DNA of 64,000 nt from Paragordius varius (taxonomy: Eukaryota; Animalia; Nematomorpha). Position 1 is the stretch's first letter. The number at the start of each line of letters is the position of its first letter. Made by a program: the position numbers and the translations under genes. The DNA lies in NCBI GenBank assembly GCA_964247055.1, contig OZ176059.1:1550001-1614000 (forward strand), written 5' to 3'. A model generated the notes under the pieces. The model was not told the origin of the DNA. It did no database searches and saw only the letters and a list, made by a program, of their open reading frames with translations. Below are positions 11,799 to 40,900 of the stretch, piece after piece.

Positions 11799-13419
11799 CA
11801 ATTTCACCCTTAAACAATTCAAATTCACCCTTGAACAATTCAAAATTCACACTCAAATAAAATATATGTTTTTTAAGATTCAAAATTACCTATATTTTAT
11901 ATATTTTTCAAAAATAAAAATTTTGATTTAAATTAAAATAATACTGAAAAAATAATAAACTATACCATAAACATATATTTCATATTAATAATGAATTATA
12001 CTAGTTCGAAAACACATAATTTATTTTTAGGGAGAATTTGAATTGTTCGAGGGTAAATTTGAATTGTTCAAGGGTTAACTTGAACTGTAAATGGTATATA
12101 TATATATATAGCGGAAAATCTAAATTATTATATAATAGATTGCCCACCCGATGCTCCCAGAGTATTTTGTTATGTCGATCCGTGTGATTTTGCGACATGT
12201 CCAAATTTTCCAAATGCCACTTGTCAAGCCAACTATTGTGGTGGCTGTAATGCCGAATTTTATTATAATGGAGAAAAGGTGGATTGTTTAACTGGTAAAT
12301 TAAGCTTTATAGTATAATTTATTTTGAAAGACAGTATTAAATTGTTGCCTGTTTTAATAAGTATGAATATTGCTTCTGCATATTTGAGCAAACTTTAAAA
12401 TTAATCAATTTTTTTTATAAAAAAATTTCATTTTTTAATCCAACATATGACAAAGATACTTTAGTTAGGAAGTCATTTTAATAATGGTAACAGTCATGCT
12501 ATTAAAGGCATTCATAACCGGTCAAAACCATATGCAAAAAGGGTTCTTTGTGATTTAAACCACACGTTTTTAGCATAAATATTTTTGTTAAAACACAAAA
12601 TCAAATAAATTTTTGTTTTATATTTTACAAAAAGATTGTCCCGATGACCAAGTGATTGTAAATTGTCTAGTGGAACCATGTTTGTTTGCAGTATGCCCTA
12701 GGTATCCTGGAGCTACATGTGTTTCAAATTATTGTGGTGGATGTAGGGCCAATTTCTATTATAGGGGAGCACTCGTTACAAATTGTGAAAAAGGTTAATT
12801 TTTTAATTATCTCTATAATTATTTTTTTTTTATTTTTTTTTAACTTAGTATTTGGATAATATATTACAGTATACACCCAGTTTATCGTTGACCAATTCAC
12901 ATTTTGTGTTGGCAAATTGATAATACAGTAACGTATGATATAAAAAACAGATTTTGTCCATAATTTTAAATTTTATGTTGAAAATGGGGTATAATGTTTT
13001 TTTGCAACCATTTGTTGTTTCTTACCTATATGCTATTGTATTGCCAATTAGCACAAAATAATGTAAAGTGGCCAACAATAAAGTGGGTACTGTATTTACA
13101 TGTTAATATTTACTGATTTTTCCCAAAATCTAGTTTGGATTTACCTTTTTTTATGATAGTTAAAGTGTGTATAACTGCCCTAAATATAATAATAAGTTTG
13201 CAGATATCAGTTTACACATTATAACTTATTTTTTGTTTGTCTCAAATAACCCAAGAATGTTCTCGACCACTTGTACGATGTAAACGGAATCCATGTGATG
13301 GTAAAACATGTCCAGCTTTTCCCCAAGCCGTATGTGTCCCCAATTATTGTAAACGATGTTCGGCCGAATTTTATCTCCCTTTCAATAGCACGCGCGTTAA
13401 TTGTAACCGACGATATTAA
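11295..13419 (+). CDS. Small secreted protein (184 aa): signal peptide plus three tandem 8-cysteine modules; family not recognised
   Basis: Exons 11295-11370 (MFVFLAFITLILPGIYDSQYPNPDL), 12139-12294, 12635-12793, 13256-13419. All introns are phase 1 GT-AG; 555 nt, open. Module consensus C-x6-8-C-x3-PC-x4-CP-x2-P-x-A-x-C-x2-NYC-x2-C-x-A-x-FY-x7-8-C. Confidence 0.8.
11795..12094. mobile_element. MITE family C (TA|CCATTTACAGTTCAAATTCACCC, 21-bp subterminal tandem repeats) inside a (TA)n tract
   Basis: Inverted arrays of CAAATTCACCCTTGAACAATT around an AT-rich core. Further copies at 18151-18414, 20184-20533, 20968-21903, ~22441-22693, 35204-35553, 37557-~37853, 47240-47461 and 54058-54290. Confidence 0.85.
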
Positions 13420-16798: not shown

Positions 16799-19700
16799 TT
16801 AGTTTGCAGAATTTGAGGTTGATGTCGCGGTTGTCGTAGCAGTAAACGAAGTACCAAGCCGACATAAAAAGGCAATAGTTTTGTAAATCAGTGCTTTAAT
16901 TATAGCCGGACATTTGGGGTGACTTGCTAATTCTTGGATCGCCATACGTAACTCGGAAAATATTATTCTACACATATTTAAATTTTTATACATATTTTTT
17001 TGTAATACCATCGATCATTCGAAATGAACAAATTATAAAAAGTTATTTCATTTTTTTAAATTAACAACCAAAATATAAAATCCCCAATCTTTTTAAGTCA
17101 CGAAACCGTGTATCCACTAATATTTCTGTTATAACTGTAACTGTGATACAGTATTTAAACGCATTGTTCATTATAAAAAAAATAGTTAATACCTGCAATA
17201 TGGGTTACGTTGAGATGTGTATCGAAACGTTAAAAAGCGATAGTATACAAATGGTAGAAATAAATTGCTTCGACCCCTGTAATTTATAAATATATAAAAA
17301 TTATAAAATCGATAGGATTATTTTGATTTGTGCCCATTTAATATATATATGTGATTTTATATCATAAGTAATTATAAAAAGTACTTAAAATTTTTTTTGG
17401 AATTGATGTAATATATAAAAGGTATTATAAAATTTTGATATGAAACACCCGTAACATATGTGCAAAACATATAATACTCGATAGAATAAAAGTGAAAATT
17501 GTTGTGAATATTGAAGAGCAATTTTGAAATAAAAAATTTAATTAATGCCTAATCATTACGTGTTAAATCCCTTTCCTTTGCTATCTTTAAGATTTTTATT
17601 AACAATTTTGGGCCTTTAAGGGTAAATTAAAATGAAAAAAAAAAAACTTACGTGAATACGCTAAAAATTATGGCTGGCATAATGAATATTTCAGTGCAAG
17701 CTATAAGACGTAACATACTCACTTGTTGACCATTCAATTGGGTTAACCCGTTTCGAATTATTGGGATATTCACATGGAATGCCTTTTTGTTCAGTCAATA
17801 CAGTAAAAAAAATTTTTTTTTCCAAAAAAAAAAACAACCATACTTTTTTTAAACTTTAATTTTTCTTTTATAAATTATTGTTTTAGGTGGACAAATAAGG
17901 GGAATAGACATACATGTAAATTGGTAGGACTTTCAATTATATATATATATATATATACAAAAGATGCCATCTAGAGTTGTGTAGAAAAAAAATGAATATC
18001 CGTCTCCTTTTTAAAAAAACAATTAAAAAATTTCAGTTTTTTTACTATTTCAATCTTTATATGTGATAGTTTTTTTTCATTTAAAACATTTAGAATGATC
18101 ATGGGAGTATTTAATATGGTATTTTATAAAATAACTATAATTTATATATACCATTTACAATCCAAATTCACACTCGAACAATTCAAATTCACCCTAAAAA
18201 TAAATTATGTGTTTTCGAACTAATATAGTCATCATCAAAAAGAAATATATTCTTATAGCATAGTTTATTATTTTTTCAGTATTGTATTAATTTTAAACGT
18301 AATTTTTATTTTTAAAAATATAAAAAGATATAGATTATTTTTAATCTTAAAAAACGCATAATTTATTTTAGGGTGAATTTGAATTGTTTAAGGGTGAATT
18401 TGAACTGTAAATGGTATATAAATATATATTGTATTTGAGAATTAACTTACATCAAGCACTTTTTGGGTAAAGGCCAAGGAATGTAGGAAAGCAAATAGAA
18501 ACGGAGGTACAACGGATACTAATTATATTATAATATTATATTATTAAAGTCGAAAATACCAATCCTTAAAGAGTTTATATACCAAGAGCTGTAAATTTTC
18601 AAAAACTATTTACTTAAAACAAACTAGAATAGAGTATGATTATATTTTTACTGTAATTTTGTTACGCCCTAAGAAATTTCGATATATGACATATTAATTG
18701 ATAAGAAAATTAAGATTCATTAATTTATGAGTGAAGCATATATATAGAAATTATTTTTTTTAAAATAATACTTAAAACTACATATACAAAGTATTGGTTT
18801 CTTTCACATATAATTTTAATAAAAATTAACAAATTTTTTGTGGTATATCCATCATTTTTGAAGCGCCTTAAACTTAAGTAACTCTTGTTTAATTTACTCC
18901 ATTTCACATCCTGTATATAAAATAACCCTATTATGTCGATTATTTAATTTTGTATACCATTTGAACTTCATTCAAGTTGGTCCTTAAAATTTTTAATTTT
19001 AATTCATAATTTTTGCATTTTTTTTTATTTTTTATCAAAAACCACTTTTTTGTTTCAAACTAAATTTTTTCCAATTTAACAAAATTATTAACTTTTAAAT
19101 TTGCAATAAAAAATTGTTAATAATAGCCCAGAAAAACTATTTATTTATTAATTACGTGTTTTATAAATATCCAAAATAATTTCAAGAAATTAACAAAGAT
19201 ATACGGTGCCTCAATGATTAAAAGTTAATATTGGTTTAAAATTTATCGTAAATGATAGAAAATAGGTTAAAAACGATAAAATAGATGAATGATATTCGAT
19301 TTGATTGGTAAAAAGTTAAAAACATTACAAAAAAGTCAAAGGACCTACTTAAAGTGTTCAAGGACACTCTTAAAGTGCAAATGGTATATATGGAAAAGTA
19401 TTGGTAATTTCTTAACATCATCAAACAAAGCTTATAACACACACCACCTATTATGGCCCTGCTATTTATAGTATAATTTATACATGTGATGATAACTTAC
19501 GTGTAATTTGACGTGCAAAAAATAAGAAAATAGCACTAAACATCAAATAATGACAACTATCTTCCGTCAGGATTTGGGCTAAAAAAGCGCGCGAAAAACG
19601 CCGCTGAACCCCACCAGCGCCGTTAACGGTCGGTCCTTGGCCGCCCGCCGCCGCCATCGTGCGTAAATGTAAGCGGAGAGCGGAAACTGCGGCATTTGCT

Positions 19701-22700
19701 ATGAGTATTCTTTGATACCAACTATGTTGCTTACTAAAGCAGAATCAAAAAAAAGAAAGAGAAATATAAATATTTGGTATAATTTTTTTAAAGCCTATTA
19801 TTATCAATAACCCTTTTTTTAAACAATCTTTTTTGAAACAAAATTTTTCAAATGTAATGTGTAGGTAGACCATACTTTTTTTTGGAAAAAGCAAACATAC
19901 AACATAAATTTTTATAGTTTTTAAATGTCCATAAATTTTTGTAATATTTTATCCATATATTGTATCAAAATAATAGGCCATCTCCCAATATTTAAGAAAT
20001 ATCACAGAGGCATTTGATTAAAAAACATAACATTGGAATCGGAATCGAAACCAGTCAGTTCTCTTTCCAATCCATGGTTATAAAATAGATGTACTTTATA
20101 TAAAATTTGATAATTTCAATTTTCTATTACCAAAAAAAAATAAATCGATATAAAGTAAAAGAGAGTTTTTTTTACATCATATACCATTTACAGCTCAAAT
20201 TCACCCTCAAACAATTCAAATTCACCCTCAAACGATTCATATTCACCCTAAAAATAAATCATGAAATTTCTGGCTAATATAACTCAACATTAAAATTAAA
20301 TATATTTGTATGACAAAGTTTATTATTTTTTCAGTATTATTTTGATTACATACAAAATTTGTTTTTCCTTAAAATATAAAAAAATATAAGTAATATATAA
20401 TCTTAAAAAACACATAATTTATTTTAGGGTGAATTTAAATTGTTCGAGGGTGAATTTGAATTGTTTAAGGGTGAATTTGAATTGTTCAAGGATGAATTTG
20501 AATTATTTAAGAGTGAATTTGAACTGTAAATGGTATATTTGGTATGATTTTTTTCAAAGCCTATTATTATTATTATCAAACGATTGAATACGGAATGTAT
20601 TAACCAATTTTTTGAAACAAAATTTTTCATATAATGTGTAGGTAGATCATACTTTTTTTTGCAAAAAGCAAATATACAACATAAATTTTTATAGTTTTTA
20701 TATGTCCATAAATTTTTGTAATATTTTATCCATATATTGTATCAAAATAATAGGCCATCTCCCAATATTTAAGAAAGCTAAAATGATATCAGAGGAGGAT
20801 TAAAAAACATAACATTGGAATTGGAATCAAAACCAGTCAGTTCTCTTTCCAATCCATGGTTATAAATAGATGTATTTTATATAAAATTGCTAATTTCAAT
20901 TTTCTACCAAAAAAATATATGGATATATAAGGTAAATTAAAAGAAAGTTTTTTTTACATATAATATACCATTTACAGCTCAAATTCACCCTCAAACAATT
21001 CAAATTCACACTAAAATAAATTATGACCCATGTTCGCGTAAGTATTACTTGCATCCTTATGCTTAAATCCTTATACTTACGTCCTTATGCTTACATTTTT
21101 GAATAAAAATAATCCATTCATCAAAAGTCTGCTCCTAGTAGACTTATTAAAATTTCAAAGTGGCATAACTTTAAGAATATTGCGAATTTTAGAATTCTGT
21201 AAATTGGAGGTCCAATTTTTAAAACCTATAAATAATTTGTTATATATACATTATTTTCTAATCTCCAATTTAAAAAATTTAAAAACAGGTAGTTTTTTTT
21301 ATTTCACAAAGTAATATTTCAATTTTGATAACTCAAAAAATCTAAAAATATAGTTGGATAAAATGCATACCTATTTCTTTTAAAAAACCTTTGATTTTGC
21401 ATGCATGTGGATTTATCTATTTTTTAACAGGGGTTGTGTAAACCCCTTTTAATGCCAAAAGATTGAAGCAACATTACTCAAACCTATAAATTATTTGTTA
21501 AATATACTTTACTTTCTATCCTCCAATTTAGAGAATTTAAAAATTCACATTATTTTTAAAGTTATGCCACTTTGAAATTTTAATCAGTCTACTAGGAGCA
21601 AACTTATGATGAATGTATTATTTTATTTAAAAATGTAAGCATAAGGATTTAAGCATAAGGACGCAAGTAATACTCACCCGAACATGGGTCTATGTGTTTT
21701 CGAACTAATATAACTCATTACTAATATGAAATATATCTTTATGGCATAGTTTATTATTTTTTCAGTATTATTTTTTAATTTAAAACAAAATTTTATTTTT
21801 TAAAAATATATAAAAGTATAAGTAATTTTTAATTTAAAAAAATAGATATTTTATTTAAGGGTTAATTTAAGAATTTTTAAGGGTGAATTTGAATGGTAAA
21901 TGGTATATTATAACCCTGTGAACACAAATTACATACTACATTTGTTGGTAATTATCAAATATGAGTTGATTGACTAAAGAACGCCTGAATTAAATTTTTT
22001 ATTATACACATGAAATATTAAATAAAGATTTCAATCTACCAATCCAATCTACTATAAAAAAAATTATACGTGACAAATTAAATTTCTATATTACAGTAGG
22101 CGTATTTAAAGAAACAACAAATGTCCATAATAATTATATACACAAAAAATTTGATGTCCATAATCATAGTAACATAGTATAGAAAAATTATTTAATAATT
22201 TTAATTTTAACCATCTATTGTTTTTAACCTATACACGCCTGTATATTAACCAATTAACCAAAAATAAAGTGAATGTAAATTATTATGCAATAATAAATTC
22301 GATAAATCTTACCCAATTAAGGGGAGTAGGAAAAAGAACATTGATACAACTATGACAAGTCGGAGTAACCATAAGACACCATCAAGTTTAGAGTTGAGGA
22401 GAAATTGCTAAACGATATATATAAAAACAAAAATCAAAGTTACCCTTGAACAATTCAAATTCACCCTAAAAATAAATTATAAAATTTCCGTCTAATATAA
22501 CTCATCATTAAAATATTAAATATATTTTTATGGCAAAGTTTATTATTTTTTTTCAGTATTATTTTGATTACATACAAAATTTCTTTTTTTTAATAAAATT
22601 TTTTTTAAAAAAACATATAATTTATTTAAGGGTGAATTTGAATTGTTCAAGGGTGAATTTGAATTGTTTAAGGGTGAATTTGAACTGTAAATGTATAAAA

Positions 22701-24542: not shown

Positions 24543-25634
24543 TTAATCTTCGACAAATTCATGTACGTCATAGAGTTTAGCAAAATTTTGGATAAAATAT
24601 GGTATAGTCATATCAACTGTAATATTTTTGCGTAAAATGTCCGTTATAGAAGTGACAACTAAGGAGTCTTCTAAATTTTGTCGTCCATTTTTGGGAGAGT
24701 CAAAACGATTCGTCTGCTGCAAAGAATTATTGATTTTGGTCAAACAATCTTGTTTTGTGGACTCAAATTCGCTTTTAAGATTATTTTTGTTTTCACTTAG
24801 TAATGAAGATGTTTGAAGATGTTGTGAAAGACCACATGGATCTATATACCTATACCATTTAAGGTTAACGTTACAATTTAGTGCGACACCATGAGAGGTG
24901 TAAAAATTGGCAAATCTTACACCAAGGGCCCCAACCTTTTGTGGTGACAAGGCTATAAAAGTTTCATTTAAACACTCCACCGGTTTTGAATCCGTTGTTA
25001 ATAATAACGAATCAAAATTTGTTTTAACTGTCATTTGTGAATTAGGAGTAATCAGCTGTTTAACTTCAGGTATATACCAGCTACCTGTTAGCGATGAGGG
25101 TGTTACTTTACTGTATATATAAGGCGTTTGTAAATCTCTACATGTTAATGTCATACTGTAAATTAAATTATTCACATGGATCCGAATAAAATTTAGACTA
25201 GTTTGATTAGCCTGTGATATCGTTTCGCTATCTTGGTAATTTGATGTTAACCGATCTAAGTATGGAGGACTGAATACAGAACGTAAATTTAAGATGGGAT
25301 ATGCAATTAATTGTCCTGGTCCATGGAATGTTATTAAGCCACCTCGATTAGTTTCGTAATATTCAGCCCCTTGTTCCATTAAAAATTTTTTGTTAACAGT
25401 ATAAATCGTGTCTTTAGCAGGTATATTTCCATCTTTATACTTTCGAATACCCACGGTATAAACAGGATTATGTTGTAAAAGTATAAGGATCCCTAATATT
25501 TTTTCATCCCGTTTGATTATGTCCAAAGCTCTTTCCTGTACTTTCAAACCTTCTGCATAACTTACTATTCCTAACTTCCAAAGTTTAAATATTCTTTTGC
25601 ATAAAAATAAAAAATAAAAGGCTTACCTTTTCAT
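24543..25634 (-). CDS. LIPT2: Octanoyltransferase LIPT2/LipB; 8-nt first exon (25634-25627), 33-nt intron, exon 2 at 25593-24543
   Basis: MKR/IFKLWKLGIVSYAEGLKVQE...LQHNPVYTVGIR...TNRGGLITFHGPGQLIAYPILNL...KVGALGVRF...TSHGVALNCNVNLKWYRYIDPCGL. Unspliced, the start reads ATG AAA AGG TAA, so the GTAAGC...AG intron is required. Confidence 0.9.
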
Positions 25635-25704: not shown

Positions 25705-28700
25705 ATGAAAGTAATAAATAAGCATGTTACGAATCCTATCAAGCAAAAATCTCATCTTTTCCATAAAAACCCAAAATTGTATGAAGAGGAAGTAATTAAA
25801 ATTATGATTAACCTATAAATTAGTTTTTACAGCAGTATAATCAGTTCATAATTTTATACAATGCCTTAAAATTGAACCCACATGCTGAGCATAAAGAATT
25901 TGCCAACTCTATTGTATCCTTGTCAAAGGTTAATGCCCATTATAATTGTAAGGTTGTACCATACTATAAAGATAAACAGGAGGAATTCAAAATGGTTTGC
26001 ATTGATAGTCTTAAAATTACTTCACATCCCGAAATGAAATTGGTTTTATTTTTATTGGTTTACATTTTTTTGTTTTAGATCCTTTGTAAAATTACAATGG
26101 GTTTAAGGCAACGCAAAATAATTGATACAATGACCTTTGCCCAACTTATGTTAGATTGCATACTTTCTTTACATCAAACAAGTTTCGATCAATCATCCAA
26201 TGATATAAAATTACAATCATCTGAATCTAATAACTCAATTACGCCTTCCACATCGCTTTACAAAAATGAATATAAGAAAAAAATGCGGAATTTAATTATA
26301 TCATTCCTGGTGAACGATATGAAAAATGAAAATTCACGTCATAAAAATCCCAACCTAAACTCCAAACTTCAAACCTTTTTATATCAAATTTATTCGGCAA
26401 ACACTTATGATTCCAGCAATAACACCAACAACAATAATAATAATTTTCGAATCGATGATGATTTTAAGGCTTTTGCTAAAACTGCCCTACTCATAACTAT
26501 GCGGCTTTACATCAAAGGGATTTGGAATGATGGGAAAACGGTTAATTTTTTGGCTCAAGCTTGTTTCTCCCGCATAGCTAATGTAAGTTAAATCCAAAAT
26601 ATTACCTTCTTTTTGGTTTCGTCACATACTGGTTATATTATTATGGAGATAAAACTGTAAAAGATTAAGACAAATATTTTTTTATATTAACACCACATTA
26701 TACATTTTTACAATTTCTAGCCTAGGTTATGTATGGATAAAATTAGAGTTTACAATAGTATGGCTTTCCTTTTAATAACTATTTGATTTTTAGTGTTTAT
26801 ATATTTAAGGTTATAATATTCTGTTTTGTTGTTAACACACTCAATTCATGTTGCATCAGTTATTTTGTATTTGAATATTATATATATATTTCGTGTTAAA
26901 GCTTATCTGTTGTTGAGAATAACGATTGTGTAACGTCTACGCAAATAAGGCATGCACACATAAAAAGAACTTGTGATATAATAGCCAGTCACTTTTTTAT
27001 TTTGGTTTTCTTTTTATCGCTCAACTCTATTTTAATATACCATATTGCTATACGTGAATAAATCAACTTTTCATTTGGTGCCGTGTTAGCTTTCAATGAG
27101 CCAAGCGTTGGACATTTCAAAACTGGTTTTGGAGCCTTTTAAGGAACCGATGAATTTTACGCAATATATACGTCACATCAGGAGAGTCATAAATTTCAAA
27201 AATATCGAATCCAATGACACCACAATGAAACGCACCTTTCTCGCTTTCGGCGGTATTCAAGTAATAATGAAAATCGAAACTTTAGCATACCCAAAACTCA
27301 TAGATGACATGGAATGGGAGGAAATTGCAACCTTGGCCACTCAGATATTATTTACCAATCAGCAGCCTATGGTTGATTCGAGTTGAATTCTACCGATTAA
27401 AAAAAATGCCAGATGAATCAGTCATGGATTTCCTGGAACGTCTGAAAGCAAAGTGTGAAGCCGGGAAATTTGAAGGGGATATTCAGTCAAAATTACGCGA
27501 TTTATTCCTGGTAGGTCTTGAAAATCCCAGAGTCGAACGCGAAATTCAATCCAAATATCCAGATGGCAAAAAGGACGGGGGTCCGGTAACCCTTCAAGCG
27601 ATTGTAGACATCGCTTATTCCTATGAATTAGAAGATAAAAAGGTTCACAACATCAGAGATAATAATGATATGAACAATAATAATACAAGTGAACTTCCTT
27701 CAAGTATCCAACCAGTTGTTAATGATAATAATACAATCAATCAAATAACCCGAAAGATATGTAGTAATTGTGGGTATCGACATGGTTCCGCCATTTGTCC
27801 GGCAAAAGGAAAACGGTGTTTCAATTGCGACAAATGGAATCATTTCAGCACAGTATGCAAGGCAACGTTCCGACGGCCGTCAATCCGCACCATGACTAGC
27901 CCGAACAACACCCCCCGGATTTAAGTATTAATAAATAATATACCAACAACGTTTATCTACGATACGGGCGCCGAGGTATCCGTTATTGACAAGCGCACTT
28001 GGGTAAATATTGGTCGACCTCGTTTGCTCCCAGGTCCAAATTTGCGAACCTACAATGATGGCCCGATAGAAGTACTCGGAAAATCGATAATTTCAGTGGT
28101 TTTGAACGAAGTGCGTGGTGACGCAAACTAACCCACCAAGTATTGCCCCAAACCCCTTGTTGGAAGCATCTGTTTCGATCAACAAGGGAAAACGGTCGTT
28201 AAATGGCATTAAAGCGGGGGGCCTGGTTAGCAAGCTTTTTGCTTTCGCGAATTCACTATCATCTGCCGGGGTCCACCGCCAAGGTGTATTCTTTCCACTT
28301 AACTTGTGTAAGGTTGCTAGGTGTGGGTGACAGTTTGGTATAAACCGCTCATGAAAATTTATTTAGCCTAAGAACGAACGTAGCTCAGTTTTGTTTGTAG
28401 GTGTCGGACAATTTTTAATGGCCTCTAATTTTTCATTGGACGGCTCAATACCTTGGTCAGAAATCACGTACCCCATGTATTTTACTCGTGAGATACCAAT
28501 TTGCAATTTGTCTCGGCGCAATCGTAATCCCGCCTCTTGTAACCTTCTAAATACTTCCCTTAATCTTTGATCATGTTCCTCCCTGGTAGCTCCGGAAATT
28601 AAGACATCATCCAGGTACACACAAATACCAGGTATGTCCTTTAAAAGATTGTCCATGCATCTTTGAAAGATCATAGGTGCTGAAGTTAATCCGAATGGAA

Positions 28701-31700
28701 GTCGTTGGTAAGCATAAAACCCTTTGTGAGTTGTGATGGTTACTAGCGTCTGTGACGCCTGGTCTATCGGAAATTGTAAGTAAGCATCTTTCAGGTCTAA
28801 AGTGGAAAAAATTATCCCATTTGCCACTTTGGTGGCCAACTCGTCAAAAGTAGGTATCAGATGGGAATCCTTTGCTAAATAACGGTTGATACTAATTCGG
28901 AAATCGGCACATATCCTAATTTCTCCATTTTCTTTAATTATATTTACTGTGGGAGAGGCCCATGTTATTAGGGTTTGGGTCGGATCGATAGGTCGGAGTA
29001 TTTTGAGTTTAATTAATCTATCAATTTCATTTTCTACTAAAGGTTTTAGAGTTAAAGGTACCCTACGACAAGGAAAAACTTTAGGTTTGGCCCCGGGGTC
29101 GATAAATAATTTTATTGGGGGCCCCTTGAAAGTACCTATTTCAAACCGTAATCAGAAAAAGATTTAATATACACGGTTTTGAAACGCAATTATTGAACGA
29201 ATTAAGGAAAAATATAGTAAAAATGTAAAACTAGATATTATATTGAAAAGTTGATTTATTCACGTATAGCAATATGGTATATTAAAATAGAGTTGAGCGA
29301 TAAAAAGAAAACCAAAATAAAAAAGTGAGTGGCTATTGTATCACAAGTTGTTTTATGTGTGCATGCCTTATTTGCGTAGACGTTACACAATCGTTATTCT
29401 CAACAACAGATAAGCTTTAACACGAAATATATATATAATATTCAAATACAAAATAACTGATGCACCATGAATTGAGTGTGTTAACAAAATAGAATATTAT
29501 AACCTTACATTACTTTCCCCCTAAGTTGACCACGGGGGCTGTCGTGTTCGTACATTATACCTATAAGTTTAAACGATCGGGAGGCTGCCGTCTTCTTAGC
29601 GGATATCTACGCTCGGGTAGGTCAGAAACCTCCTTTACCACGTCGGGTGTGGCCTCTACAGGCGTCAGCGATTCTGGGGCTACGTCTTGCCATGAGGTAG
29701 CAGGAGTTGGGGCATGGACTATTTGAGATTCCGAGGTGGGATGGAAGGTTTGTTCGGAGTGAGCTCCCTCCACATGACCCAGGACACTTTCGACGCTAGG
29801 ATATTTATGCTCTATTAAGGGATTAGTTTCGTATGAATTCCCTCCTGACCTACGTCGTAATTGATCTACATGTTTACGTTTTCGAATCCCTTCCTCATCT
29901 TGCACTTCATACGAGAGTAACCCCCTTCTCTCCAGAATGTGACCTGGCCCCCAGCCTAAGGCCATTTCATTTTTAATATAGACCGGATCGTCTTGTTGGA
30001 ATTCGCGTCTCGATTCATTTTCGTGCTCTATAAATTCGACAGGGGTTGTTTTTACCCAAGAGATAGGATTGTGTACACGCCGTCTTAGGAATATGGCGGA
30101 AGGCGTTTCTTTTAGCGAAGAATGCATGCTAGTGAATAAAGGACCGTGTTGATAGCTTCATATGCATGCATTTGTTGGGTCTTAGTAGCGGCATATTTCG
30201 TTTTTAATGTCTTTATTACTCTCTCTACTAGGCCGTTTGTTTTGGGGTGATAGGGTGCTGCACAGATGTGCTTTATATTCATCTGATTTAGGAGAGTCGT
30301 AAATTCTCTTGAAGTAAAAAACGTGGCATTATCGGTCACAATTTGGCGGGGAAAACCAAATCGTGCGATGTGTTTTTCCAGGCAATTTAAAACGCTTTGA
30401 CTCGTTATTGATTTAAGAAGATCTATCTCTACCCACCGTGAGGCGCTATCGATAGTCACTAACCAATAATATCCGTCCACCGGTCCAGCAACATCTATAT
30501 GTAACCTTTCCCATGTCAAAGTGTTAAAATTCCATCGATAGGGAAGATTTTCAGGTGCGTTAGGTCGATAGGTTTGGCAAGCCTCGCACCTTTCCACATA
30601 ATTCGCTAGATCGGTGTCTAATTCGGGCCAAAATACCGAACACCGGGCTTGGGCTTTCATTGTTTTTAGCCCGCTGTGTCCCGTATGCAGAAGTTGCAAT
30701 ATCGTTTCCTGCATCGCTTGTGGTATCACTAAGCGATCATTCAGGTATAACAGATTATAACAACACTCCAAGTCGTTTTTATGTTTTAAAAAAGGTTTCA
30801 GATCTTTGTAGATCCAACCGTTTGTCCTGAGAGCATTTTTAACTTTTGATAACCGTTGGTCAGTGATTGTTGCCTCTTCGACCACTTTCTTATTTACATC
30901 CAGCGTTTTTAGAGCCAAAAATCGTACCTGCTTGGTGGCCGCGTCATCTTCATCATCTGGTTGGCTATGCTCTATGGGAAGTCTCGACAACTCGTCGACT
31001 AAGTTTTCTTCCCCTTTCTTGTAAAATATTTCATACGCGTACCCGATGGTATTCGATATTCACCTGTCAGCAGTTTGCTATTATTAATGTTGTTCATGTC
31101 TCTCTTCCGCCCAAATACTGACACTAGCGGTTTATGATCTGTATATATCTCGACGGTCTTCCATATATAAAGTATTTAAATTTTTCTAGGGCAAACACTA
31201 TGGCCTTGGCCTCTTTTTCGATCGTGGAATAACCCTTTTCTGCTATTGAACAAGTTCGTGACGCGTAAAAAATTGGGCGTTTCCCCTGTGGGGTAAGTCG
31301 TAGACTTGTTAAACATCTTACAGTACTTCTTCATTATTGATACAAATGGGATGAACCAATTGAGCTTTTTAATGTCTAAGACGTGGGAAAGTAATCCCTG
31401 GTCTGTAGGGTTAGTCTCTGATCTTACTCCTACCGATGTGTCGGGAGGGGAAAAGTATCCACTTTGGGAAATTAATCTTTTATTTGTGTCTTTTTGAGCT
31501 TCACAAATGTAACTAATTCCTGGGGAATCCAAGAGCTTCTGAAAGATCAGGAGCTTTTCAGGATCTGGGTTTGACCAGTTGATTCCGTCAATTTTGACTG
31601 GATTGTCGTTGGTAATCGCTTCACCGTCTGGGTGTGCAAGTGGGTTCCAAGGGTATGGAAGTCTTCCATTGCTTAATCCTGATCTAGCTTTTTGGATGGC

Positions 31701-34700
31701 ACCCTTACATTAGCAGAATTTACTTCGGTGTTTTATTTTACATCAAAGTTTTAACTCTTCAAGATGAAGTCGGAGATCTATCAATAGATCAAGCCAAAAC
31801 CCTAGCCGCTTCTAAGAAGGCATGGAAATTTTCAAATCTCCCTGTCCCCGGACCATTAGTTACATTTTTTCAAGCTATAACCCCGTCCAAAGTGAACTTT
31901 GCTTCAGCAAATTTTGCCTACCCCAGAATTCCAGACAAAGTCGGACCACCAATTCTTGGTGACACCGAGACCGATAAGAAGGTGGAGTACTTGTTACCTC
32001 AACTAAACCTCCTTTACGGATTATTACGAGGATTCTCTAGCCAAAAAAGCTAGAACAGGATTAAGCAATGGAAGACTTCCATACCCTTGGAACCCACTTG
32101 CACACCCAGACGGTGAAGCGATTACCAACGACAATCCAGTCAAAATTGACGGAATCAACTGGTCAAACCCAGAACCTGAAAAGCTCCTGATCCTTCAGAA
32201 GCTCTTGGATTCCCCAGGAATTAGTTACATTTGTGAAGCTCAAAACGACACAAATAAAAGATTTTCCCAAAATGGATACTTTTCCCCTCCCGACACATCG
32301 GTAGGAGTAAGATCAGAGACTAACCCTACAGACCAGGGATTACTTTCCCACGTCTTAGACATTAAAAAGCTCAATTGGTTCATACCATTTGTATCAATAA
32401 TGAAGAAGTACTGTAAGATGTTTAACAAGTCTACGACTTACCCCACAGGGGAAACGCCCAATTTTTTACGCGTCACAAACTTGTTCAATAGCAGAAAAGG
32501 GTTATTCCACGATCGAAAAAGAGGTCAAGGCCATAGTGTTTGCCCTAGAAAAATTTAAATACTTTATATATGGAAGACCGTTCGAGATATATACAGATCA
32601 TAAACCGCTAGTGTCAGTATTTGGGCGGAAGAGAGACATGAACAACATTAATAATAGCAAACTGCTGACAGGTGAATATCGAATACCATCGGGTACGCGT
32701 ATGAAATATTTTACAAGAAAGGGGAAGAAAACTTAGTCGACGAGTTGTCGAGACTTCCCATAGAGCATAGCCAACCAGATGATGAAGATGACGCGGCCAC
32801 CAAGCAGGTACGATTTTTGGCTCTAAAAACGCTGGATGTAAATAAGAAAGTGGTCGAAGAGGCAACAATCACTGACCAACGGTTATCAAAAGTTAAAAAT
32901 GCTCTCAGGACAAACGGTTGGATCTACAAAGATCTGAAACCTTTTTTAAAACATAAAAACGACTTGGAGTGTTGTTATAATCTGTTATACCTGAATGATC
33001 GCTTAGTGATACCACAAGCGATGCAGGAAACGATATTGCAACTTCTGCATACGGGACACAGCGGGCTAAAAACAATGAAAGCCCAAGCCCGGTGTTCGGT
33101 ATTTTGGCCCGAATTAGACACCGATCTAGCGAATTATGTGGAAAGGTGCGAGGCTTGCCAAACCTATCGACCTAACGCACCTGAAAATCTTCCCTATCGA
33201 TGGAATTTTAACACTTTGACATGGGAAAGGTTACATATAGATGTTGCTGGACCGGTGGACGGATATTATTGGTTAGTGACTATCGATAGCGCCTCACGGT
33301 GGGTAGAGATAGATCTTCTTAAATCAATAACGAGTCAAAGCGTTTTAAATTGCCTGGAAAAACACATCGCACGATTTGGTTTTCCCCGCCAAATTGTGAC
33401 CGATAATGCCACGTTTTTTACTTCAAGAGAATTTACGACTCTCCTAAATCAGATGAATATAAAGCACATCTGTGCAGCACCCTATCACCCCAAAACAAAC
33501 GGCCTAGTAGAGAGAGTAATAAAGACATTAAAAACGAAATATGCCGCTACTAAGACCCAACAAATGCATGCATATGAAGCTATCAACACGGTCCTTTATT
33601 CACTAGCATGCATTCTTCGCTAAAAGAAACGCCTTCCGCCATATTCCTAAGACGGCGTGTACACAATCCTATCTCTTGGGTAAAAACAACCCCTGTCGAA
33701 TTTATAGAGCACGAAAATGAATCGAGACGCGAATTCCAACAAGACGATCCGGTCTATATTAAAAATGAAATGGCCTTAGGCTGGGGGCCAGGTCACATTC
33801 TGGAGAGAAGGGGGTTACTCTCGTATGAAGTGCAAGATGAGGAAGGGATTCGAAAACGTAAACATGTAGATCAATTACGACGTAGGTCAGGAGGGAATTC
33901 ATACGAAACTAATCCCTTAATAGAGCATAAATATCCTAGCGTCGAAAGTGTCCTGGGTCATGTGGAGGGAGCTCACTCCGAACAAACCTTCCATCCCACC
34001 TCGGAATCTCAAATAGTCCATGCCCCAACTCCTGCTACCTCATGGCAAGACGTAGCCCCAGAATCGCTGACGCCTGTAGAGGCCACACCCGACGTGGTAA
34101 AGGAGGTTTCTGACCTACCCGAGCGTAGATATCCGCTAAGAAGACGGCAGCCTCCCGATCGTTTAAACTTATAGGTATAATGTACGAACACGACAGCCCC
34201 CGTGGTCAACTTAGGGGGAAAGTAATGTAAGGTTATAATATTCTATTTTGTTAACACACTCAATTCATGGTGCATCAGTTATTTTGTATTTGAATATTAT
34301 ATATATATTTCGTGTTAAAGCTTATCTGTTGTTGAGAATAACGATTGTGTAACGTCTACGCAAATAAGGCATGCACACATAAAAAGAACTTGTGATATAA
34401 TAGCCAGTCACTTTTTTATTTTGGTTTTCTTTTTATCGCTCAACTCTATTTTAATATACCATATTGCTATACGTGAATAAATCAACTTTTCAATATAATA
34501 TCTAGTTTTACATTTTTTTACTATATTTTTCCTTAATTCGTTCAATAATTGCGTTTCTAAACCGTGTATATTAAATCTTTTTCTGATTACGGTTTGAAAA
34601 TGTGGGGTTTGTTTGTTGTTTTATGCAGATAAAATAAACTTTGTCAAGTTACATAAATTTAACATTAATAATATCTAATTGAGTGGGTAACGACGAGAGT

Positions 34701-37305
34701 TTGTAATGTAAATGATGTTAGAATCGTCGTAAAATAACGCAAAAATAAAAATAATTTTATTAATTCTCAAATTTTCGCCATAGGCATCATCAGGAGATTA
34801 GTTATTTAATTTTTATTTTCTTATATTATATATATTTTTCTTAACTAATCTCATGATGATGCCTATGGCGAAAATTTGAGAATTAATAAAATTATTTTTA
34901 TTTTTGCGTTATTTTACGACGATTCTAACATCATTAATAATATCTATTATTTGGGTTTGGAAAAATCGGTATTTCACAAAATTCTTGTGTATTATCTCTT
35001 TTTTGCATAGTTTTTTTTAATTTTGTCTTCATATTTTCGAAAATATATATGTAGATTTTTTTCAAACTTAGATTATGTCAATGGCAATACGATTTTTCTT
35101 GAATCCAAACGATTTCAAAGTTGATGAAGACAATGATCCCAGCTGCTCAGCGACAAAAGTTTTATTCATAAATTATTTACAGTATTTATGTTTAATTGAT
35201 ATACCATTTACAGTTCAAATTCACCCTTGAACAATTCAAATTCACCCTCGAACAATTCAAATTCACCCTAAAAATAAATTATGTGTTTTCGAACTAACAT
35301 AACTCATTATTTATATAAAATATATCTTTATGGCATAATTTATTATTTTTTCAGTATTATTTTAATTTAAAACAAAATTTTATTTTTTAAAAAATAGATT
35401 AAAATATACGTAATTTTTAATCTTAAAAAACATGTTATTTATTTGAGGGTGAATTTGAATTGTTCGAGGGTGAATTTGAATTGTTCAAGGGTGAATTTGA
35501 ATTGTTTAAAGGTGAATTTGAATTGTTTAAGGGTGAATTTGAAGTGTATTTGGTATATATAGTGGAATGTTAATAACCATCACGCCTATAAACTAATAAT
35601 TACATCGCCGGTTTGTTTAACACTAACAAGTTAAATGAATTTGCGGATTTATTAATTACATAATTTGAAGGGTCAAATTTGAAAACTTATGAGGCCTTCT
35701 AATAAATATTTTTAAATTAAAACATTTTTTAATCATATGATTGTTAAAAATTTACTACGAATCAAACAATATAACTACCATTTATTTATGCACTTTCTTT
35801 GTTAATTTATTTCAAGATTGTTTAAAAGGAATATCAAAATAATTTATGTTTCGTAAATAGCGCACCTTATTTTTAATGTTATAAAATTTTAAAATTTTTG
35901 GAGGCTTAAATTGGATTTATTACCCCTGAATTAGATCATGTTGATTATTTACCGGTTTTTAAGTTTAAAATGTGTTAATTTTTAAGTTGTGTCATTATTT
36001 TAAGTCAGTTATGTTTCACGTCGCCACAAGCATACTTTATGGGTCCAAAAACAATAAGGAAATTATATATAATCATTTTATACTCTTTTTTACTAAAAGA
36101 ATCGAAATATTAGTAAAATAAACTATAAAATTAATTAAAAATTATTCAATTTTAATATTATATTCCCAAAACATGGGTCATGATAACCATATTGAGTTAT
36201 ATATATTTCTCCTATGTCATTAGGGTAGGGGGGGGAGCATACATTTTATTTCCAAACATGAAATATTTTAAAATGGTTAAAAATTATATTTTTTTCGTAG
36301 TATTTAATTATTTTTTGATTCATATTTTATCTGGTGAAAAAAAACTACCATATTGTAACAAAGAATTTACTTTAAATATAATTTTTATCGTTTTAAATAT
36401 AAAATTTTTTTTTAATTATCAAAAAATTATTTATTTTAGTCTAATGATGGCACACTAAATGCCGCCGATATTATGAAACGCAGTAAAATAACGAAAAAAA
36501 CTCGAAGTCGAAAGAAACAAACCGCGCGACAATTGAAAGCGCTCGTAAAACGCACCACTGCGACAGTGGATAAGGAAGGAATTACAATGTTTAATAGTAA
36601 TACACAAAAACTGATTGATTACCTTTATGATTCTCAAGGTTGTTTTTTTGCATATAAAACTTAACTTGACAAATTTATTTAAAATGTGCTTGATTAATAA
36701 TTCGATTGATTTGAGTTGATAAAACAGTGTGTGTGGAAGAATTGTATAATGAATTTAAAAAAATTGTCTTAAAAACCTTATTAGATAAGACTACTTTGAG
36801 GGAAATGGCGATTGATTAATATGCATGATGATTATTTTGACAAGAAATATTAGTATAGTTATGATTTAAAATGCAAAAATTGCGATTTTTATATCAGTTA
36901 ATATAATTGAAAATTACTTTAACATCGCTGCATTAATCCAAATTACAAAACAGTCTAATATTAAAACCCTTTGTAATAATACTTATTAATAACCAATCGA
37001 ATATCTTAAAATAAATTGTTTAAAAAATTATCTATCGTCGTAATTTACGGAAAAATTATATCATATTTTTTTATTTGTGTATAGAATTTGCTGAAAAATT
37101 ATTCCTACAATTACAACATCGCAATGAAGGGTTTGAGATACGGAGTATTAGTATAGATTTAGTTTCACGTATTATTGGTCTACATAAGGTAATAAATAAA
37201 TATATATATTTATAATGGTCAAATTACATATAATATTGTTTCCATTTTTTTAAATCGTTTTAGCATACCTGAGTGTTTAAAATTCTAATTAACACTTTAT
37301 TATTA

Positions 37306-37346: not shown

Positions 37347-37849
37347 TACAGTATGCATACTGTAATATTGATCAATTTTCATTATTGTTGGACAATTGGT
37401 ATGGTAATACACTAGCGTATGATATAAAACAAATTTCGTCCATTAAATAAACAAAGACGTTGTAATTTCAACCATTTGTTGATTTTATTACGCATACGCT
37501 ATTGTATTCGTTACTAGAATGTGAATTGATCCTATATATATATATATATGTATATACCATTTACTTGAACAATTCAAATTCACCCTCAAATAAAATATAT
37601 ATTTTTTTTTAAGATTAAAAATTACCTATATTTTATATTTTTAAAAAATAAAAATTTTGTTTTAAATTAAAATACAAACTATACCATAAACATATATTTC
37701 ATATTAATAATGAATTATATTAGTTCGAAAACACATAATTTATTTTTAGAATAAATTTGAATTGTTTAAGAGGGTGAATTTGAATTGTTTAAGGGTGAAT
37801 TTGAATTGTTCAAGGGTGATGAATTTGAATTGTTCAAGGGTGAATTTTA

Positions 37850-37930
<81 letters not shown>

Positions 37931-40900
37931 TTCGTTTTTTTAGCTACAAATTCCAAATTTTTATCCATACATTCAACGTTATCTACAACCGCACCAAAGT
38001 AATGTTACAAAGCTACTTTTATACACGGTTCAAGCTACGCATGAGATGGTCCCTCCTGAGGTATTAATTGTTTCCATTTTAATTTTAACCAAATTTTGAA
38101 ATAATTAGTTAAGAAAACAATTATATTTCACACACACACATAAAAAAGTTTATGAGTTTTCAAATAATTTATATATAATAATAATGTGATAATTTACTTT
38201 TTAATGCTATGCGATAAATTTAAATATATGAACATTTTAAGTTCACTTCAAGTTGGTCCTTAAACACTTCAAGTTGGACTTTAAAGATTTTAAATTTTGA
38301 TTCAATCATAATTTTTGCATGTAATTTTTTATTTTATTATTTTTTAACCTAATTTGCTTTATTTATAATATAAATTTATTCATTTAGAAATAAAAATATT
38401 TATTAAAAAACTACTTTTTTATTTTAAACTAATTTTTTTCCAATTTAACAAAATTAACTTTTATATGTTAATGAAAAATGTAAATAATAAAACTTATATA
38501 TTTTTTAATTAGGTGTGAAAATCTTATAAATATCCAAAATAATTTTATGAAATTAATAAATATATACGGCTTTTCAATGATTTAAAGTTGATATTGATTT
38601 AAAATTTTTTGTTAAATAATTGAAAATACGTCAGAAACAATAAAATAGATGAATGATTTACGATTTCATTGATTAACGTATCAAAACAAAAAAGCCAAAG
38701 GACCAACTTAAAGTGTTTAAGGACCAACTGAAGTGTTCAAGGACCAACTTGAAATTTTCAAGGACACGCTTGAAACGCAATTTAAAAGGTAAACGATAAA
38801 TTTTATTAGTATATCTTTTTAAAATTACACTTAATTGGCAGTGATATATGATGTTGGTGGTTTTTCCAAATATACAATTCTAATTATCCATTTGCTCTTC
38901 AAGAGTGTCCTTGAACACTTCAAGTTGGTCCTTGAACATTTCAAGTTGGTCCTTTGACTTTTTTTGTTTTTAACTTTTATGAATCAAATCGCTTATCATT
39001 CATCTATTTTATCGTTTTTATTTTATTATTATTTAACAGGGGTTTTATATCAATATCCACTTTCTGGGTTATTATTTACAATTTTTCATTGAAAACATTT
39101 AAAAGTTAATAATTTTGTTAAACTTAAAAAAAATTAGTTTGAAACTTAAATGTTTTTGAACAAAAAAATTTTATTAATGAATAAATATATAATAAATAAT
39201 AAAGAATATTAGGGTAAAAAATAATAAAATAAAAAAATACATACAAAAATCATAGTTAAATCAAAATAAAAATTATAAAGACCAACTTGAACTGTTCAAG
39301 GACACTCTTGAAGTGCAAATGGTATATTTACAATTTTTTATTGAAAACAGTAAAAGTTTAGTTTGAAACAAAAAAGTGGTTTTTGAACAAAAAATTTTAA
39401 TTTTGAATAAATAAATAAATAAAGAATATTTGGTTAAAAAATAATAAAATAAAAAAAAACATGCAAAAATCATGGTATAATTAAAATTCGAAAATTTTAA
39501 CGACCAACTTGAAGTGCAAATGGTTTGTATTACAGTAGGCATTGTAATGCTATTTATTTTACACTATAGCAGAGGGTAATTTGCAACACAGGAGTGTATG
39601 GAAAAAAGAAAGGACCTAATTGTTTTATCAACATTTTGTTGTTTTTTCCATACACTATTGTGACGCAAATTGCCCTCTACTATAGTGTGAAATAAGCAAG
39701 CAACCCTTAAGTTGCATACTGTATATTAGGCTGTTAAATAATATAATTGGTTATATATATAGAAAAAAAGGTTTTTTTTACCTTTTGATATTCATTTTTA
39801 TTTTTAATTAAAAGTAAAGAATAATCCCTATTTAATTATTAGTAATAAGGCGTTTCACAATTATTTATTCCATTTATTTGCAATATTTTTTATAAATCAA
39901 AAACTTTTGATTAATTTTTCGACTTTAAAAGACATTTTATATCTTAAACAAAAAATTTTACTTTTCTCTTAAAGAAATTCCTTACAGTTATAGATTTTAT
40001 AATATATATTATAGACGCTCAAACCTATAGTTATGTGTATAGCTAATAATTTTATAACGGAAAAAAATTCGGGGGAAGTTATAACAGTTGGTCTTAACGC
40101 TATCCGTGAATTGTGTAATCGAAACGCATTAGTTATGGATAAGGATTTACTCAATGATTTGGAGATGTATAAAACATACAAGTAAGTTTTTTTAGGCATT
40201 TTATTTGATTATAATAATATATTATAAATGGTGTTTTAATCTAAATGAGAAATAAAATAAATATTCATTATTTTTTGATTTGATATTTGATTGCTTATTT
40301 TTGTAAATACTAATGATTTCTTAAAACTCAACGTTTTGAACATGATACAAATCATACATAAAATTATCGTTTTCTACCCTTTAAATTATATTTTTCACAA
40401 TATCCAATCAAATAGAGGCTTACATAAAAAATATTGTTTAAAATATGCATTTTTTCACGCCTCTGATTTATAAATAATAAATTTAAAATATTTACCAGTA
40501 GTCTAGAGAGTAGTAACTGATTAAAAATATCACGAGTCAAAAGCTTTCAATATCTTGTCACGAAAAATAAGTTTAATGGCATAAAAATTAAATTTAGGTA
40601 TCGTCTTAGTCATTGTATCCATATAGAAGCTGCTTGTAATATTTGCGATCTTGCCAGGCGTTATCATTAATGTTGACGACACTTAACTCATTATTTATTG
40701 TTTTTTCTCCCAGTTAAAAGTTGGTCTACCCCTGCGATTGTTACCTTCGGGATGTACGGATACAATTTTATTTGTCAATTGATTGTTCTGGAGCACGTTT
40801 GATGTGTCCGAAATATCTAAGCCTATTTTTTGTGTTCATAATATTTAAAGGTTTGATTTGGTACAGTTGATGCAAATTCAATTAACTTATTGGGGTCCAA

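What the first reader, a model, noticed from the sequence alone, without database searches (positions are those of the whole stretch)
29139..34599. 5.46-kb inverted duplication centred on the viral fragment: a potential intronic hairpin source of antiviral and anti-TE small RNA
Arms 29139-31695 and 32041-34599 (~2.56 kb) flank a 345-bp loop. About 400 bp of viral sequence plus RH, integrase and LTR lie in the stem. The whole structure is inside intron 3 of SDA1, an essential ribosome-biogenesis gene, so it should be transcribed constitutively without its own promoter and could fold into long dsRNA for Dicer or ADAR. The arms include ~105 bp of host DNA beyond the 3' LTR, so the duplication was a DNA-level event after integration. 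Function as heritable immunity is inference.
Basis: partly seen in the sequence, partly recalled or inferred. Interest (0 to 1): 0.88.

Follow-up and report, generated by a model that had tools for sequence, protein, structure and literature searches.

The report
Inverted duplication in a dead retrotransposon
A broken Ty3/gypsy-type retrotransposon inside an intron of the ribosome-biogenesis gene SDA1 carries a real 2.56-kb inverted duplication that would fold into long double-stranded RNA if transcribed, but its centre is not demonstrably viral and no function is shown.

Summary
Arms 29139-31695 and 32041-34599 are 99.3% complementary around a 345-nt loop, and each arm includes 105-107 nt of host DNA beyond an LTR.

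The structure lies within one rearranged Ty3/gypsy LTR retrotransposon (26804-34492; three LTR copies, 5-nt target-site duplication, PBS, PPT). The element sits on the sense strand in an early intron of SDA1.

The retrotransposon is dead. Its RT segment is inverted, RNase H is split, and gag and pol carry stops and frameshifts.

The "viral fragment" (loop plus 405 nt per arm, 31696-32445 as unique sequence) has two long open stretches and element-like base composition. No similarity to any virus or other protein was found by Pfam in six frames or by PDB sequence search. An exhaustive HMMER search of the stem part and a word-index search of the loop part also found none.

The arms differ at 18 sites, all near the arm ends, and the middle 1803 nt are identical. 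That pattern fits a genuine DNA-level fold-back or template-switch event rather than an assembly chimera, but only reads can prove it.

Production of hairpin RNA is a reasonable inference. Antiviral immunity is unsupported. Precedents exist in maize Mu killer, tomato pararetroviral inverted repeats and nematode and fly hairpin loci. This is a new member of a known kind, of modest interest.

The parts
26097..26582 (+). SDA1 exon upstream of the insertion (SDA1_HEAT profile 67-152; human SDA1 homologue residues 129-212), followed by a GT donor
26799..26803 (.). Left copy of the 5-nt target-site duplication (ATATA); the right copy is 34493-34497
   Evidence: read directly
26804..27073 (+). 5' LTR (270 nt), followed two bases later by a TGG-starting primer-binding-site-like sequence
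27090..27921 (+). gag-like ORF region, no Pfam family; broken by one frameshift; one in-frame stop separates it from protease (possibly the native gag/pol boundary)
27925..28125 (+). Retropepsin, N-terminal about three quarters only; cut off by the junction with the inverted segment, which lies within about 28105-28137
28128..29138 (-). Segment B, inverted: reverse transcriptase plus the N-terminal half of RNase H (Ty3 Gag-Pol 591-903); one in-frame stop
29139..29243 (-). Left arm, outer end: inverted copy (105 nt) of the host flank 34493-34599
29244..29509 (-). Left arm: inverted LTR copy (266 nt); four alignment columns private to this copy
29510..31291 (-). Left arm: inverted copy of PPT, integrase and the C-terminal half of RNase H; three frameshifts
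31292..31695 (-). Left arm, inner end: inverted copy of the unidentified sequence X
31696..32040 (+). Loop L (345 nt, single copy); open on the + strand over its whole length (open stretch 31688-32050, 121 codons); no homologue found
32041..32445 (+).
32446..34225 (+). Right arm: C-terminal half of RNase H (Ty3 Gag-Pol 917-972), integrase (H2C2 zinc domain and rve core; Ty3 1081-1297), a C-terminal region with no Pfam family, and the polypurine tract; two frameshifts
34226..34492 (+). Right arm: 3' LTR (267 nt)
34493..34599 (+). Right arm, outer end: host intron DNA (107 nt) that is copied in the left arm
37024..37212 (+). Open stretch holding a downstream SDA1 exon (SDA1_HEAT profile 235-276); further exons lie in 37944-38096 (271-314) and 40015-40182 (310-364)

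Best explanation
A Ty3/gypsy-type LTR retrotransposon integrated, in sense orientation, into an early intron of SDA1. Later one or a few DNA repair or replication accidents rearranged it. The RT segment was inverted. A 750-nt stretch of unidentified coding-like DNA (L-X) became joined to the second half of RNase H. A fold-back then copied X, RNase H (C-terminal half), integrase, the 3' LTR and 107 nt of host flank in inverse orientation, leaving L as a 345-nt spacer. The result is an inert element remnant and most probably a neutral or slightly harmful by-product. Any + strand transcript that crosses it, whether SDA1 pre-mRNA or a transcript from the 5' LTR, must fold into about 2.5 kb of near-perfect dsRNA, including 1.8 kb without a mismatch. 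That dsRNA would be a substrate for ADAR in the nucleus and, if it reaches Dicer, a source of small RNAs against this retrotransposon family. This is an anti-transposon effect of the Mu killer type, not a demonstrated antiviral one. Shown: the anatomy, the element's family, the intronic position, the post-integration origin and the fold. Inferred: the repair mechanism, transcription and any processing.
For: Palindrome. One element with a target-site duplication, PBS and PPT. Ty3/gypsy identity: Pfam RVT_1, RT_RNaseH(_2), Integrase_H2C2, rve and retropepsin; best solved relatives are Ty3 RT 4ol8 and Ty3 Gag-Pol 7q5b. Segments B and C meet at adjoining positions of RNase H (Pfam profile 46 against 52; Ty3 903 against 917), so L-X has no counterpart in the family. 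The host flank in both arms places the event after integration. Arm differences: 13 substitutions and 5 indel events, all within the 541 nt next to the loop and the 215 nt next to the outer junction, with the middle 1803 nt identical. None of 200000 random placements gave such a gap. All four arm-to-arm differences in the LTR are private to the left arm, with the 5' LTR as outgroup. Hairpin fold. SDA1 exons on both sides on the + strand. AATAAA and ATTAAA hexamers are rarer in the element (1.8 per kb) than in the host intron beyond it (4.5 per kb), so read-through is plausible. Precedents for fold-back duplications with spacers: PMC3907307. Precedents for hairpin-forming inverted duplications of mobile or viral DNA: PMC3440606, PMC9868043, PMC7084138, PMC5392987.
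Against: There are no reads, so an assembly chimera is not excluded. There are no expression or small-RNA data. Intronic dsRNA is nuclear and may be edited or degraded rather than diced; in C. elegans ADAR editing keeps such palindromes out of RNAi (PMC7084138). Whether any active copy of this family exists to be silenced is unknown. The fold-back junction shows only 0-2 nt of possible microhomology, which does not favour any one repair pathway. The source of L-X is unknown.
Confidence: 0.6

Rival explanations
1. Assembly or library artefact: a palindromic chimeric read (missed adapter, amplification fold-back) was built into the contig, and the organism has only the right arm.
For: Palindromes are a known chimera type. 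No read-level evidence is available. None of the window's ORFs tried is on record elsewhere, so no second assembly could be compared.
Against: There is a 345-nt single-copy spacer. The arms differ by 13 substitutions, 8 of them transversions, and 5 indels, clustered at the arm ends rather than scattered. The left LTR has four private differences. The left arm is joined to a further inverted RT segment, which a simple fold-back read would not produce. The window has no N.
Confidence: 0.12
2. One reading: the centre is a fragment of an exogenous virus (an endogenous viral element), and the intronic hairpin is kept by selection as heritable antiviral and anti-transposon RNA immunity.
For: L-X is foreign to the Ty3/gypsy pol layout. 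It is open on one strand more than chance allows: the two longest open stretches on one strand sum to a value reached in 5 of 5000 simulations. Its GC content (41-42%) is unlike the host's (23-32%). The host genome and its relatives seem unsampled in the protein collections, so a negative search is weaker than usual. The concept has precedents in plants (PMC9868043).
Against: No viral Pfam family in any of six frames. No PDB match. The exhaustive HMMER search of X against 1.84 billion proteins returned only three hits, none of them viral; the one I aligned (P0001) is a weak 26%-identity match repeated across FN3 repeats, and the other two matched in 7-12 separate stretches. The word-index search of L found nothing. 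The element's own gag also lacks any Pfam family, so an unidentified transposon ORF explains L-X equally well. The GC content equals that of the retrotransposon. There is no evidence of selection: the structure sits in a decayed element.
Confidence: 0.06
3. Two independent insertions of the same family, head to head, rather than a duplication.
For: Nested and adjacent insertions of one family are common.
Against: Both arms carry the same 105-107 nt of host flank beyond the LTR and the same X-to-RNase H junction. The left copy has no 5' part of its own. 1803 nt are identical between arms, while the element's own 5' and 3' LTRs differ by 2.2%.
Confidence: 0.02
4. An old palindrome kept uniform by arm-to-arm gene conversion, not a recent event with error-prone synthesis near its junctions.
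For: Divergence at the arm ends (2.2-2.8%) is close to the 5' against 3' LTR divergence (2.2%), while the middle is identical. Palindrome arms in other genomes are known to be homogenised except near their borders (my own knowledge).
Against: All LTR differences lie on the left arm and none on the right. Substitutions are rich in transversions. Both fit mutagenic copying better, though the numbers are small.
Confidence: 0.2

Closest known systems
Maize Mu killer (Slotkin et al. 2005, cited in PMC9868043; PMC3440606)
   Same: A natural partial inverted duplication of a mobile element. It is proposed to be transcribed by read-through from a host gene into a hairpin RNA of about 4 kb that yields siRNAs.
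   Different: Mu killer is a DNA transposon in a plant and its heritable silencing has been demonstrated. Here the element is an LTR retrotransposon in an unidentified AT-rich eukaryote (probably an animal; not tested), lies inside an intron, and has no expression or silencing data.
Tomato inverted-repeat pararetroviral integrations (PMC9868043)
   Same: Rearranged integrations of reverse-transcribing elements, in introns or between genes, arranged as inverted repeats of hundreds to thousands of bp. They are proposed as hairpin sources of heritable RNA-based immunity.
   Different: In tomato the sequences are recognisably viral and 22-nt siRNAs map to the arms. Here the recognisable part is a Ty3/gypsy retrotransposon and the extra part is unidentified.
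Palindromic repeats within C. elegans genes, and Drosophila hairpin-RNA loci (PMC7084138, PMC5392987)
   Same: Long inverted repeats transcribed as part of genes, forming dsRNA that is edited by ADAR or diced into endo-siRNAs.
   Different: Those are mostly short DNA-transposon or tandem-derived hairpins with measured small RNAs. This one has 2.56-kb arms and nothing has been measured.
Fold-back inverted duplications with a spacer (PMC3907307)
   Same: Two inverted arms separated by a short single-copy spacer, with arms running into flanking unique DNA.
   Different: The human cases span kilobases to megabases at chromosome ends. This one is local (5.5 kb) and part of a multi-junction rearrangement inside one transposon.
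Ty3 of yeast (Metaviridae; PDB 4ol8, 7q5b)
   Same: Best solved relatives of the RT, RNase H and integrase pieces. The inferred domain order is also PR-RT-RH-IN.
   Different: The relationship is distant (E-values from 1e-35 down to 3e-4). The element here is rearranged and broken.

Membership tests
Ty3/gypsy LTR retrotransposon (Metaviridae) | Direct long terminal repeats bounding the element, with a target-site duplication | tested here: met
   LTRs 26804-27073 and 34226-34492 are 97.8% identical. A 5-nt ATATA lies on both sides. The 3' LTR starts TG and ends CA; the 5' LTR start carries one substitution.
Ty3/gypsy LTR retrotransposon (Metaviridae) | Primer-binding site after the 5' LTR and polypurine tract before the 3' LTR | tested here: met
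   A TGG-starting sequence lies two bases after the 5' LTR, and a purine run lies just before the 3' LTR. The priming tRNA was not identified.
Ty3/gypsy LTR retrotransposon (Metaviridae) | pol domains in the order PR-RT-RH-IN, with closest relatives in the Ty3/gypsy group | tested here: met
   Pfam domains. Best PDB hits are Ty3 RT and Gag-Pol, with pieces mapping to 591-829, 831-903, 917-972 and 1081-1297. The order is inferred from pieces compared apart, because the RT segment now lies inverted.
Endogenous viral element of a non-retroviral virus | Significant protein or nucleotide similarity to an exogenous virus | tested here: not met
   Six-frame Pfam scan: no viral family. PDB: none. HMMER of X against 1.84 billion representatives: three hits, none viral and none convincing. 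Word-index search of L: none. L was not searched exhaustively, and nucleotide virus collections were not searched (step left out).
Hairpin-RNA / endo-siRNA locus | Long inverted repeat able to fold into an extended hairpin on one transcript | tested here: met
   2.56-kb arms 99.3% identical. Inner 1441 nt fold with MFE -1077 kcal/mol.
Hairpin-RNA / endo-siRNA locus | Transcription through both arms, and Dicer-dependent small RNAs from the arms but not the loop | not testable with these tools
   No expression or small-RNA data are available here.
Mu killer-type silencing locus | Inverted partial duplication of a mobile element placed so that a host promoter reads through it | tested here: met
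   The duplication lies inside an SDA1 intron on the transcribed strand. Only the architecture was tested; actual read-through transcription could not be tested here.
Mu killer-type silencing locus | Trans-silencing of active copies of the same family | not testable with these tools
   The rest of the genome is not available. No other copy lies in the window.
Fold-back / template-switch inverted duplication | Inverted arms separated by a single-copy spacer and extending into flanking unique DNA | tested here: met
   345-nt loop. 105-107 nt of host flank in both arms.
Fold-back / template-switch inverted duplication | Microhomology at the novel junctions | tested here: inconclusive
   0-2 nt are possible at the loop junction. 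The ends of segments B and C share a few identical bases. The other junctions lack the original partner sequence.
Assembly chimera | Arms that are copies of one molecule (identical apart from random errors), usually with no spacer | tested here: not met
   18 clustered differences, 13 of them substitutions, and a 345-nt spacer. Read support itself is not testable here.

The most novel reading that the evidence does not exclude
L-X is a piece of an unsampled virus, or of another invader, captured next to a gypsy-type element. It was then turned by a fold-back duplication into a long hairpin inside a constitutively expressed essential gene, giving its host (probably an animal) a heritable, promoter-independent source of small RNAs against that invader. 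This would be an animal counterpart of the tomato pararetroviral hairpins.
Probability: 0.05. Interest if true: 0.8.

Novelty: new member of a known kind. Interest (0 to 1): 0.3.

Why it matters
If the palindrome is real and transcribed, it is a clean natural example of how one repair accident turns a dead retrotransposon into a long-dsRNA source under a housekeeping promoter. That is the first step proposed for Mu killer-type silencing loci and for some small-RNA genes. The non-uniform arm divergence could also help to tell error-prone repair synthesis from arm-to-arm gene conversion.

Tried and rejected
(1) Identifying L-X. Pfam on open stretches and on all 26 six-frame pieces, PDB sequence search, the exhaustive HMMER job on X and the word-index search on L all found nothing usable. 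The three HMMER hits are an FN3-repeat protein, a CHU_C protein and a protein with only scattered sub-threshold Pfam matches. They matched in 5, 12 and 7 separate stretches, and the one I aligned showed the same weak 26%-identity match repeated across its repeats.
(2) AlphaFold2 on L and X without an alignment gave pLDDT 45 and 39. I did not run fold search, because matches to such models are meaningless.
(3) tblastn of L and X against the window found no other copy and no likeness to the element's gag.
(4) Host identification. Exact look-ups of host ORFs and of element ORFs in the protein collection were not on record. The SDA1-exon homologue search found nothing because of the length window. 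Rfam and tRNA scans were empty.
(5) My last homologue search, on integrase, was wasted by too strict an E-value cut-off of 1e-20, so no full-length relatives were obtained and the family is placed only by Pfam and PDB.
(6) The exon or exons for SDA1_HEAT profile 152-235 and the N-terminal exon or exons were not found.
(7) 'Two head-to-head insertions' was rejected because both arms share the host flank.
(8) L-X as the missing protease end and linker was rejected: it is too long and has no likeness.
Full report
OBSERVATION. The repeat finder reports collinear inverted blocks of 1803 nt (100%), 319 nt (99%), 220 nt (98%), 147 nt (95%) and 85 nt (99%). blastn joins them into one alignment, 29139-31693 against 32044-34599, 99.26% over 2559 columns. 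Read by eye, the arms reach 31695 and 32041, so the loop is 345 nt. The window has no N. As RNA, the inner 1441 nt fold into a near-perfect hairpin, MFE -1077 kcal/mol.

WHAT SURROUNDS IT. The window is very AT-rich (22-31% GC), except for 28-34 kb at 41-42%. A third copy of a 267-270-nt repeat lies at 26804-27073. It is direct with 34226-34492 (97.8%) and inverted with 29244-29509 (96.3%). The outer pair are the LTRs of one element, 26804-34492. The same 5 nt (ATATA) flank it on both sides. A TGG-starting primer-binding-like site follows the 5' LTR, and a purine tract precedes the 3' LTR.

Pfam and PDB searches of the open stretches, each searched apart, give these pieces:
- gag-like ORFs at 27090-27921 on the + strand, with no Pfam family.
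- The first three quarters of a retropepsin at 27925 to about 28125 on the + strand.
- On the MINUS strand, reverse transcriptase and the first half of RNase H at 29138 down to about 28128 (RVT_1 3-205; RT_RNaseH_2 1-46; Ty3 Gag-Pol 7q5b 591-829 and 831-903).
- In the right arm on the + strand, the second half of RNase H from 32446 (RT_RNaseH_2 52-100; Ty3 917-972) and integrase (Integrase_H2C2, rve; Ty3 1081-1297).

The best solved relatives are Ty3 RT (4ol8) and Ty3 Gag-Pol (7q5b), so this is a Ty3/gypsy (Metaviridae-type) LTR retrotransposon. On the + strand the order is A (LTR-gag-PR), B' (RT and RH N-half, inverted), h' (host flank copy), C' (LTR, IN, RH C-half, inverted), X', loop L, X, C, h. 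That makes at least four novel junctions.

STATE OF THE ELEMENT'S GENES (counts only):
- gag has one frameshift.
- One in-frame stop lies between gag and protease; it may be the native boundary.
- Protease has lost its C-terminal end at a rearrangement junction.
- The RT/RNase H segment is inverted and has one in-frame stop.
- RNase H is split in two by the rearrangement, with L-X in between.
- The RNase H-integrase part has two frameshifts in the right arm and three in the left arm.
The element is dead.

THE 'VIRAL FRAGMENT'. Segments B and C end and begin at adjoining positions of RNase H. The 750 nt between them in the unique reading (loop 31696-32040 plus X 32041-32445) therefore have no counterpart in the family.

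It looks like decayed coding sequence. Two overlapping open stretches on the + strand (121 and 183 codons, one frame change between them) sum to a value reached in 5 of 5000 composition-matched simulations. Its GC content (41-42%) equals that of the retrotransposon's interior (41-44%) and not that of the host's exons (26-33%) or introns (23%).

I could not show it to be viral:
- No Pfam family at E up to 10 for the long stretches.
- No viral family in any of the 26 six-frame pieces.
- No PDB sequence match.
- The exhaustive HMMER search of X against 1.84 billion representatives gave three hits, none viral. They matched in 5, 12 and 7 separate stretches, and the one I aligned is a weak 26%-identity match repeated across FN3 repeats.
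- The word-index search of L gave nothing.
- Single-sequence structure models were too poor to search with (pLDDT 45 and 39).

The negative result is weaker than it sounds. The element's own gag has no Pfam family either. None of the window's ORFs tried is in the collections. L was never searched exhaustively. The fair statement is: unidentified, transposon-like in composition, not shown to be viral.

POST-INTEGRATION ORIGIN AND REALITY. Both arms run 105-107 nt past the LTR into host intron DNA, and that flank begins with the target-site duplication.

The arms differ by 13 substitutions (8 transversions) and 5 indel events. All lie in the 541 nt next to the loop or the 215 nt next to the outer junction, and 1803 nt in the middle are identical. 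None of 200000 random placements of 18 differences leaves such a gap. With the 5' LTR as outgroup, all four LTR differences between the arms are private to the left arm.

A chimeric read would give identical arms or scattered errors, usually with no spacer, and would not explain the inverted RT segment. I therefore take the palindrome as real (about 0.85), but only reads can settle it. The clustered differences fit either error-prone repair synthesis near template switches or arm-to-arm gene conversion in the middle. I cannot tell which.

The simplest mechanism is a fold-back or multi-template-switch event of the kind described for inverted duplications with spacers (PMC3907307). This is inference. 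The loop junction offers only 0-2 nt of microhomology.

POSITION IN SDA1. SDA1_HEAT matches lie on the + strand at about 26097-26582 (profile 67-152; residues 129-212 of the human homologue in PDB 8fl2), followed by a GT donor. Further matches lie at 37024-37212 (235-276), 37944-38096 (271-314) and 40015-40182 (310-364). The element is thus inside an SDA1 intron, in the sense orientation.

I searched the exons one by one by reference and built no joined model. The exon or exons for profile 152-235 and for the N-terminus were not found, so 'intron 3' is unverified; at least one coding exon must lie upstream. That SDA1 is essential and broadly expressed is established knowledge from yeast and human, not tested here.

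'No promoter of its own' is inaccurate, because three LTR copies are present. Poly(A) hexamers are rarer in the element (1.8 per kb) than in the host intron beyond it (4.5 per kb), so read-through is plausible.

HOW IT MOST LIKELY WORKS. Shown: any + strand transcript crossing 29139-34599 carries both arms and will form about 2.5 kb of dsRNA. Inferred: such intronic dsRNA would be edited by ADAR and/or diced. The small RNAs would match the RNase H-integrase-LTR part of this retrotransposon family and the unidentified X. Whether this matters depends on active copies existing, which is unknown. The most likely status is a neutral by-product with potential anti-transposon activity. Antiviral immunity is unsupported.

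COMPARISON AND NOVELTY. The idea is not new. Mu killer is a natural inverted duplication of MuDR read through from a flanking gene (PMC3440606). Tomato carries intronic and intergenic inverted-repeat pararetroviral integrations that yield siRNAs (PMC9868043). C. elegans genes carry palindromic repeats that ADAR keeps out of RNAi (PMC7084138). Drosophila has hairpin loci that give Dicer-2-dependent esiRNAs (PMC5392987). This locus would be a new member of that kind: structurally clear, functionally untested. Interest 0.3.

STEPS LEFT OUT AND SLIPS.

Two slips occurred in my reasoning only; nothing from them was sent to a tool, saved or used. First, I recalled from memory a stretch of a human SDA1-homologue N-terminus and a few protease motif letters. 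Second, while reading the two RNase H ends I wrote out a short string running across the junction between segments B and C. I stopped there and do not repeat either here.

Noticed in passing
window 34704-34942: A second, small palindrome (101-nt arms, 96% complementary, 37-nt spacer) lies 105 nt beyond the outer end of the right arm. It could be a MITE or fold-back element, and might have helped stall replication near the breakpoint.
   Followed up: no
window 11795-12099, 18157-18408, 20171-20538, 21691-21897, 22431-22688, 35191-35558, 37564-37867, 47246-47455, 54050-54294: A MITE-like repeat family, 70-91% identical between copies, with internal 21-nt tandem units in both orientations. It is scattered through introns and intergenic DNA, and one copy lies 600 nt downstream of the palindrome.
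   Followed up: partly
window 29139-34599 (arm comparison): Arm differences are confined to both arm ends, are rich in transversions (8 of 13), and within the LTR are all on the left arm. This pattern is not clock-like.
   Followed up: partly
window 644-1810 (+) and 24543-25547 (-): A single-ORF thiamin pyrophosphokinase gene. A lipoyl ligase A/B catalytic-domain exon lies head to head with SDA1, about 550 nt from the SDA1 exon, which suggests a shared bidirectional promoter region.
   Followed up: no
window 26097-26582: The SDA1 exon carries an Asn-rich low-complexity insertion relative to the human homologue, in keeping with the extreme AT content. The host organism could not be identified.
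   Followed up: no
window 19027-19324 and 38396-38688: Direct repeats 77-87% identical lie 19.4 kb apart, on either side of the SDA1 5' region. This is another dispersed repeat family.
   Followed up: no
window 33578-34171 (+) and 27090-27921 (+): The roughly 200-residue region after the integrase core and the whole gag have no Pfam family. The integrase piece found no relative at E 1e-20 among 587 candidates, so the element belongs to a poorly sampled lineage.
   Followed up: partly
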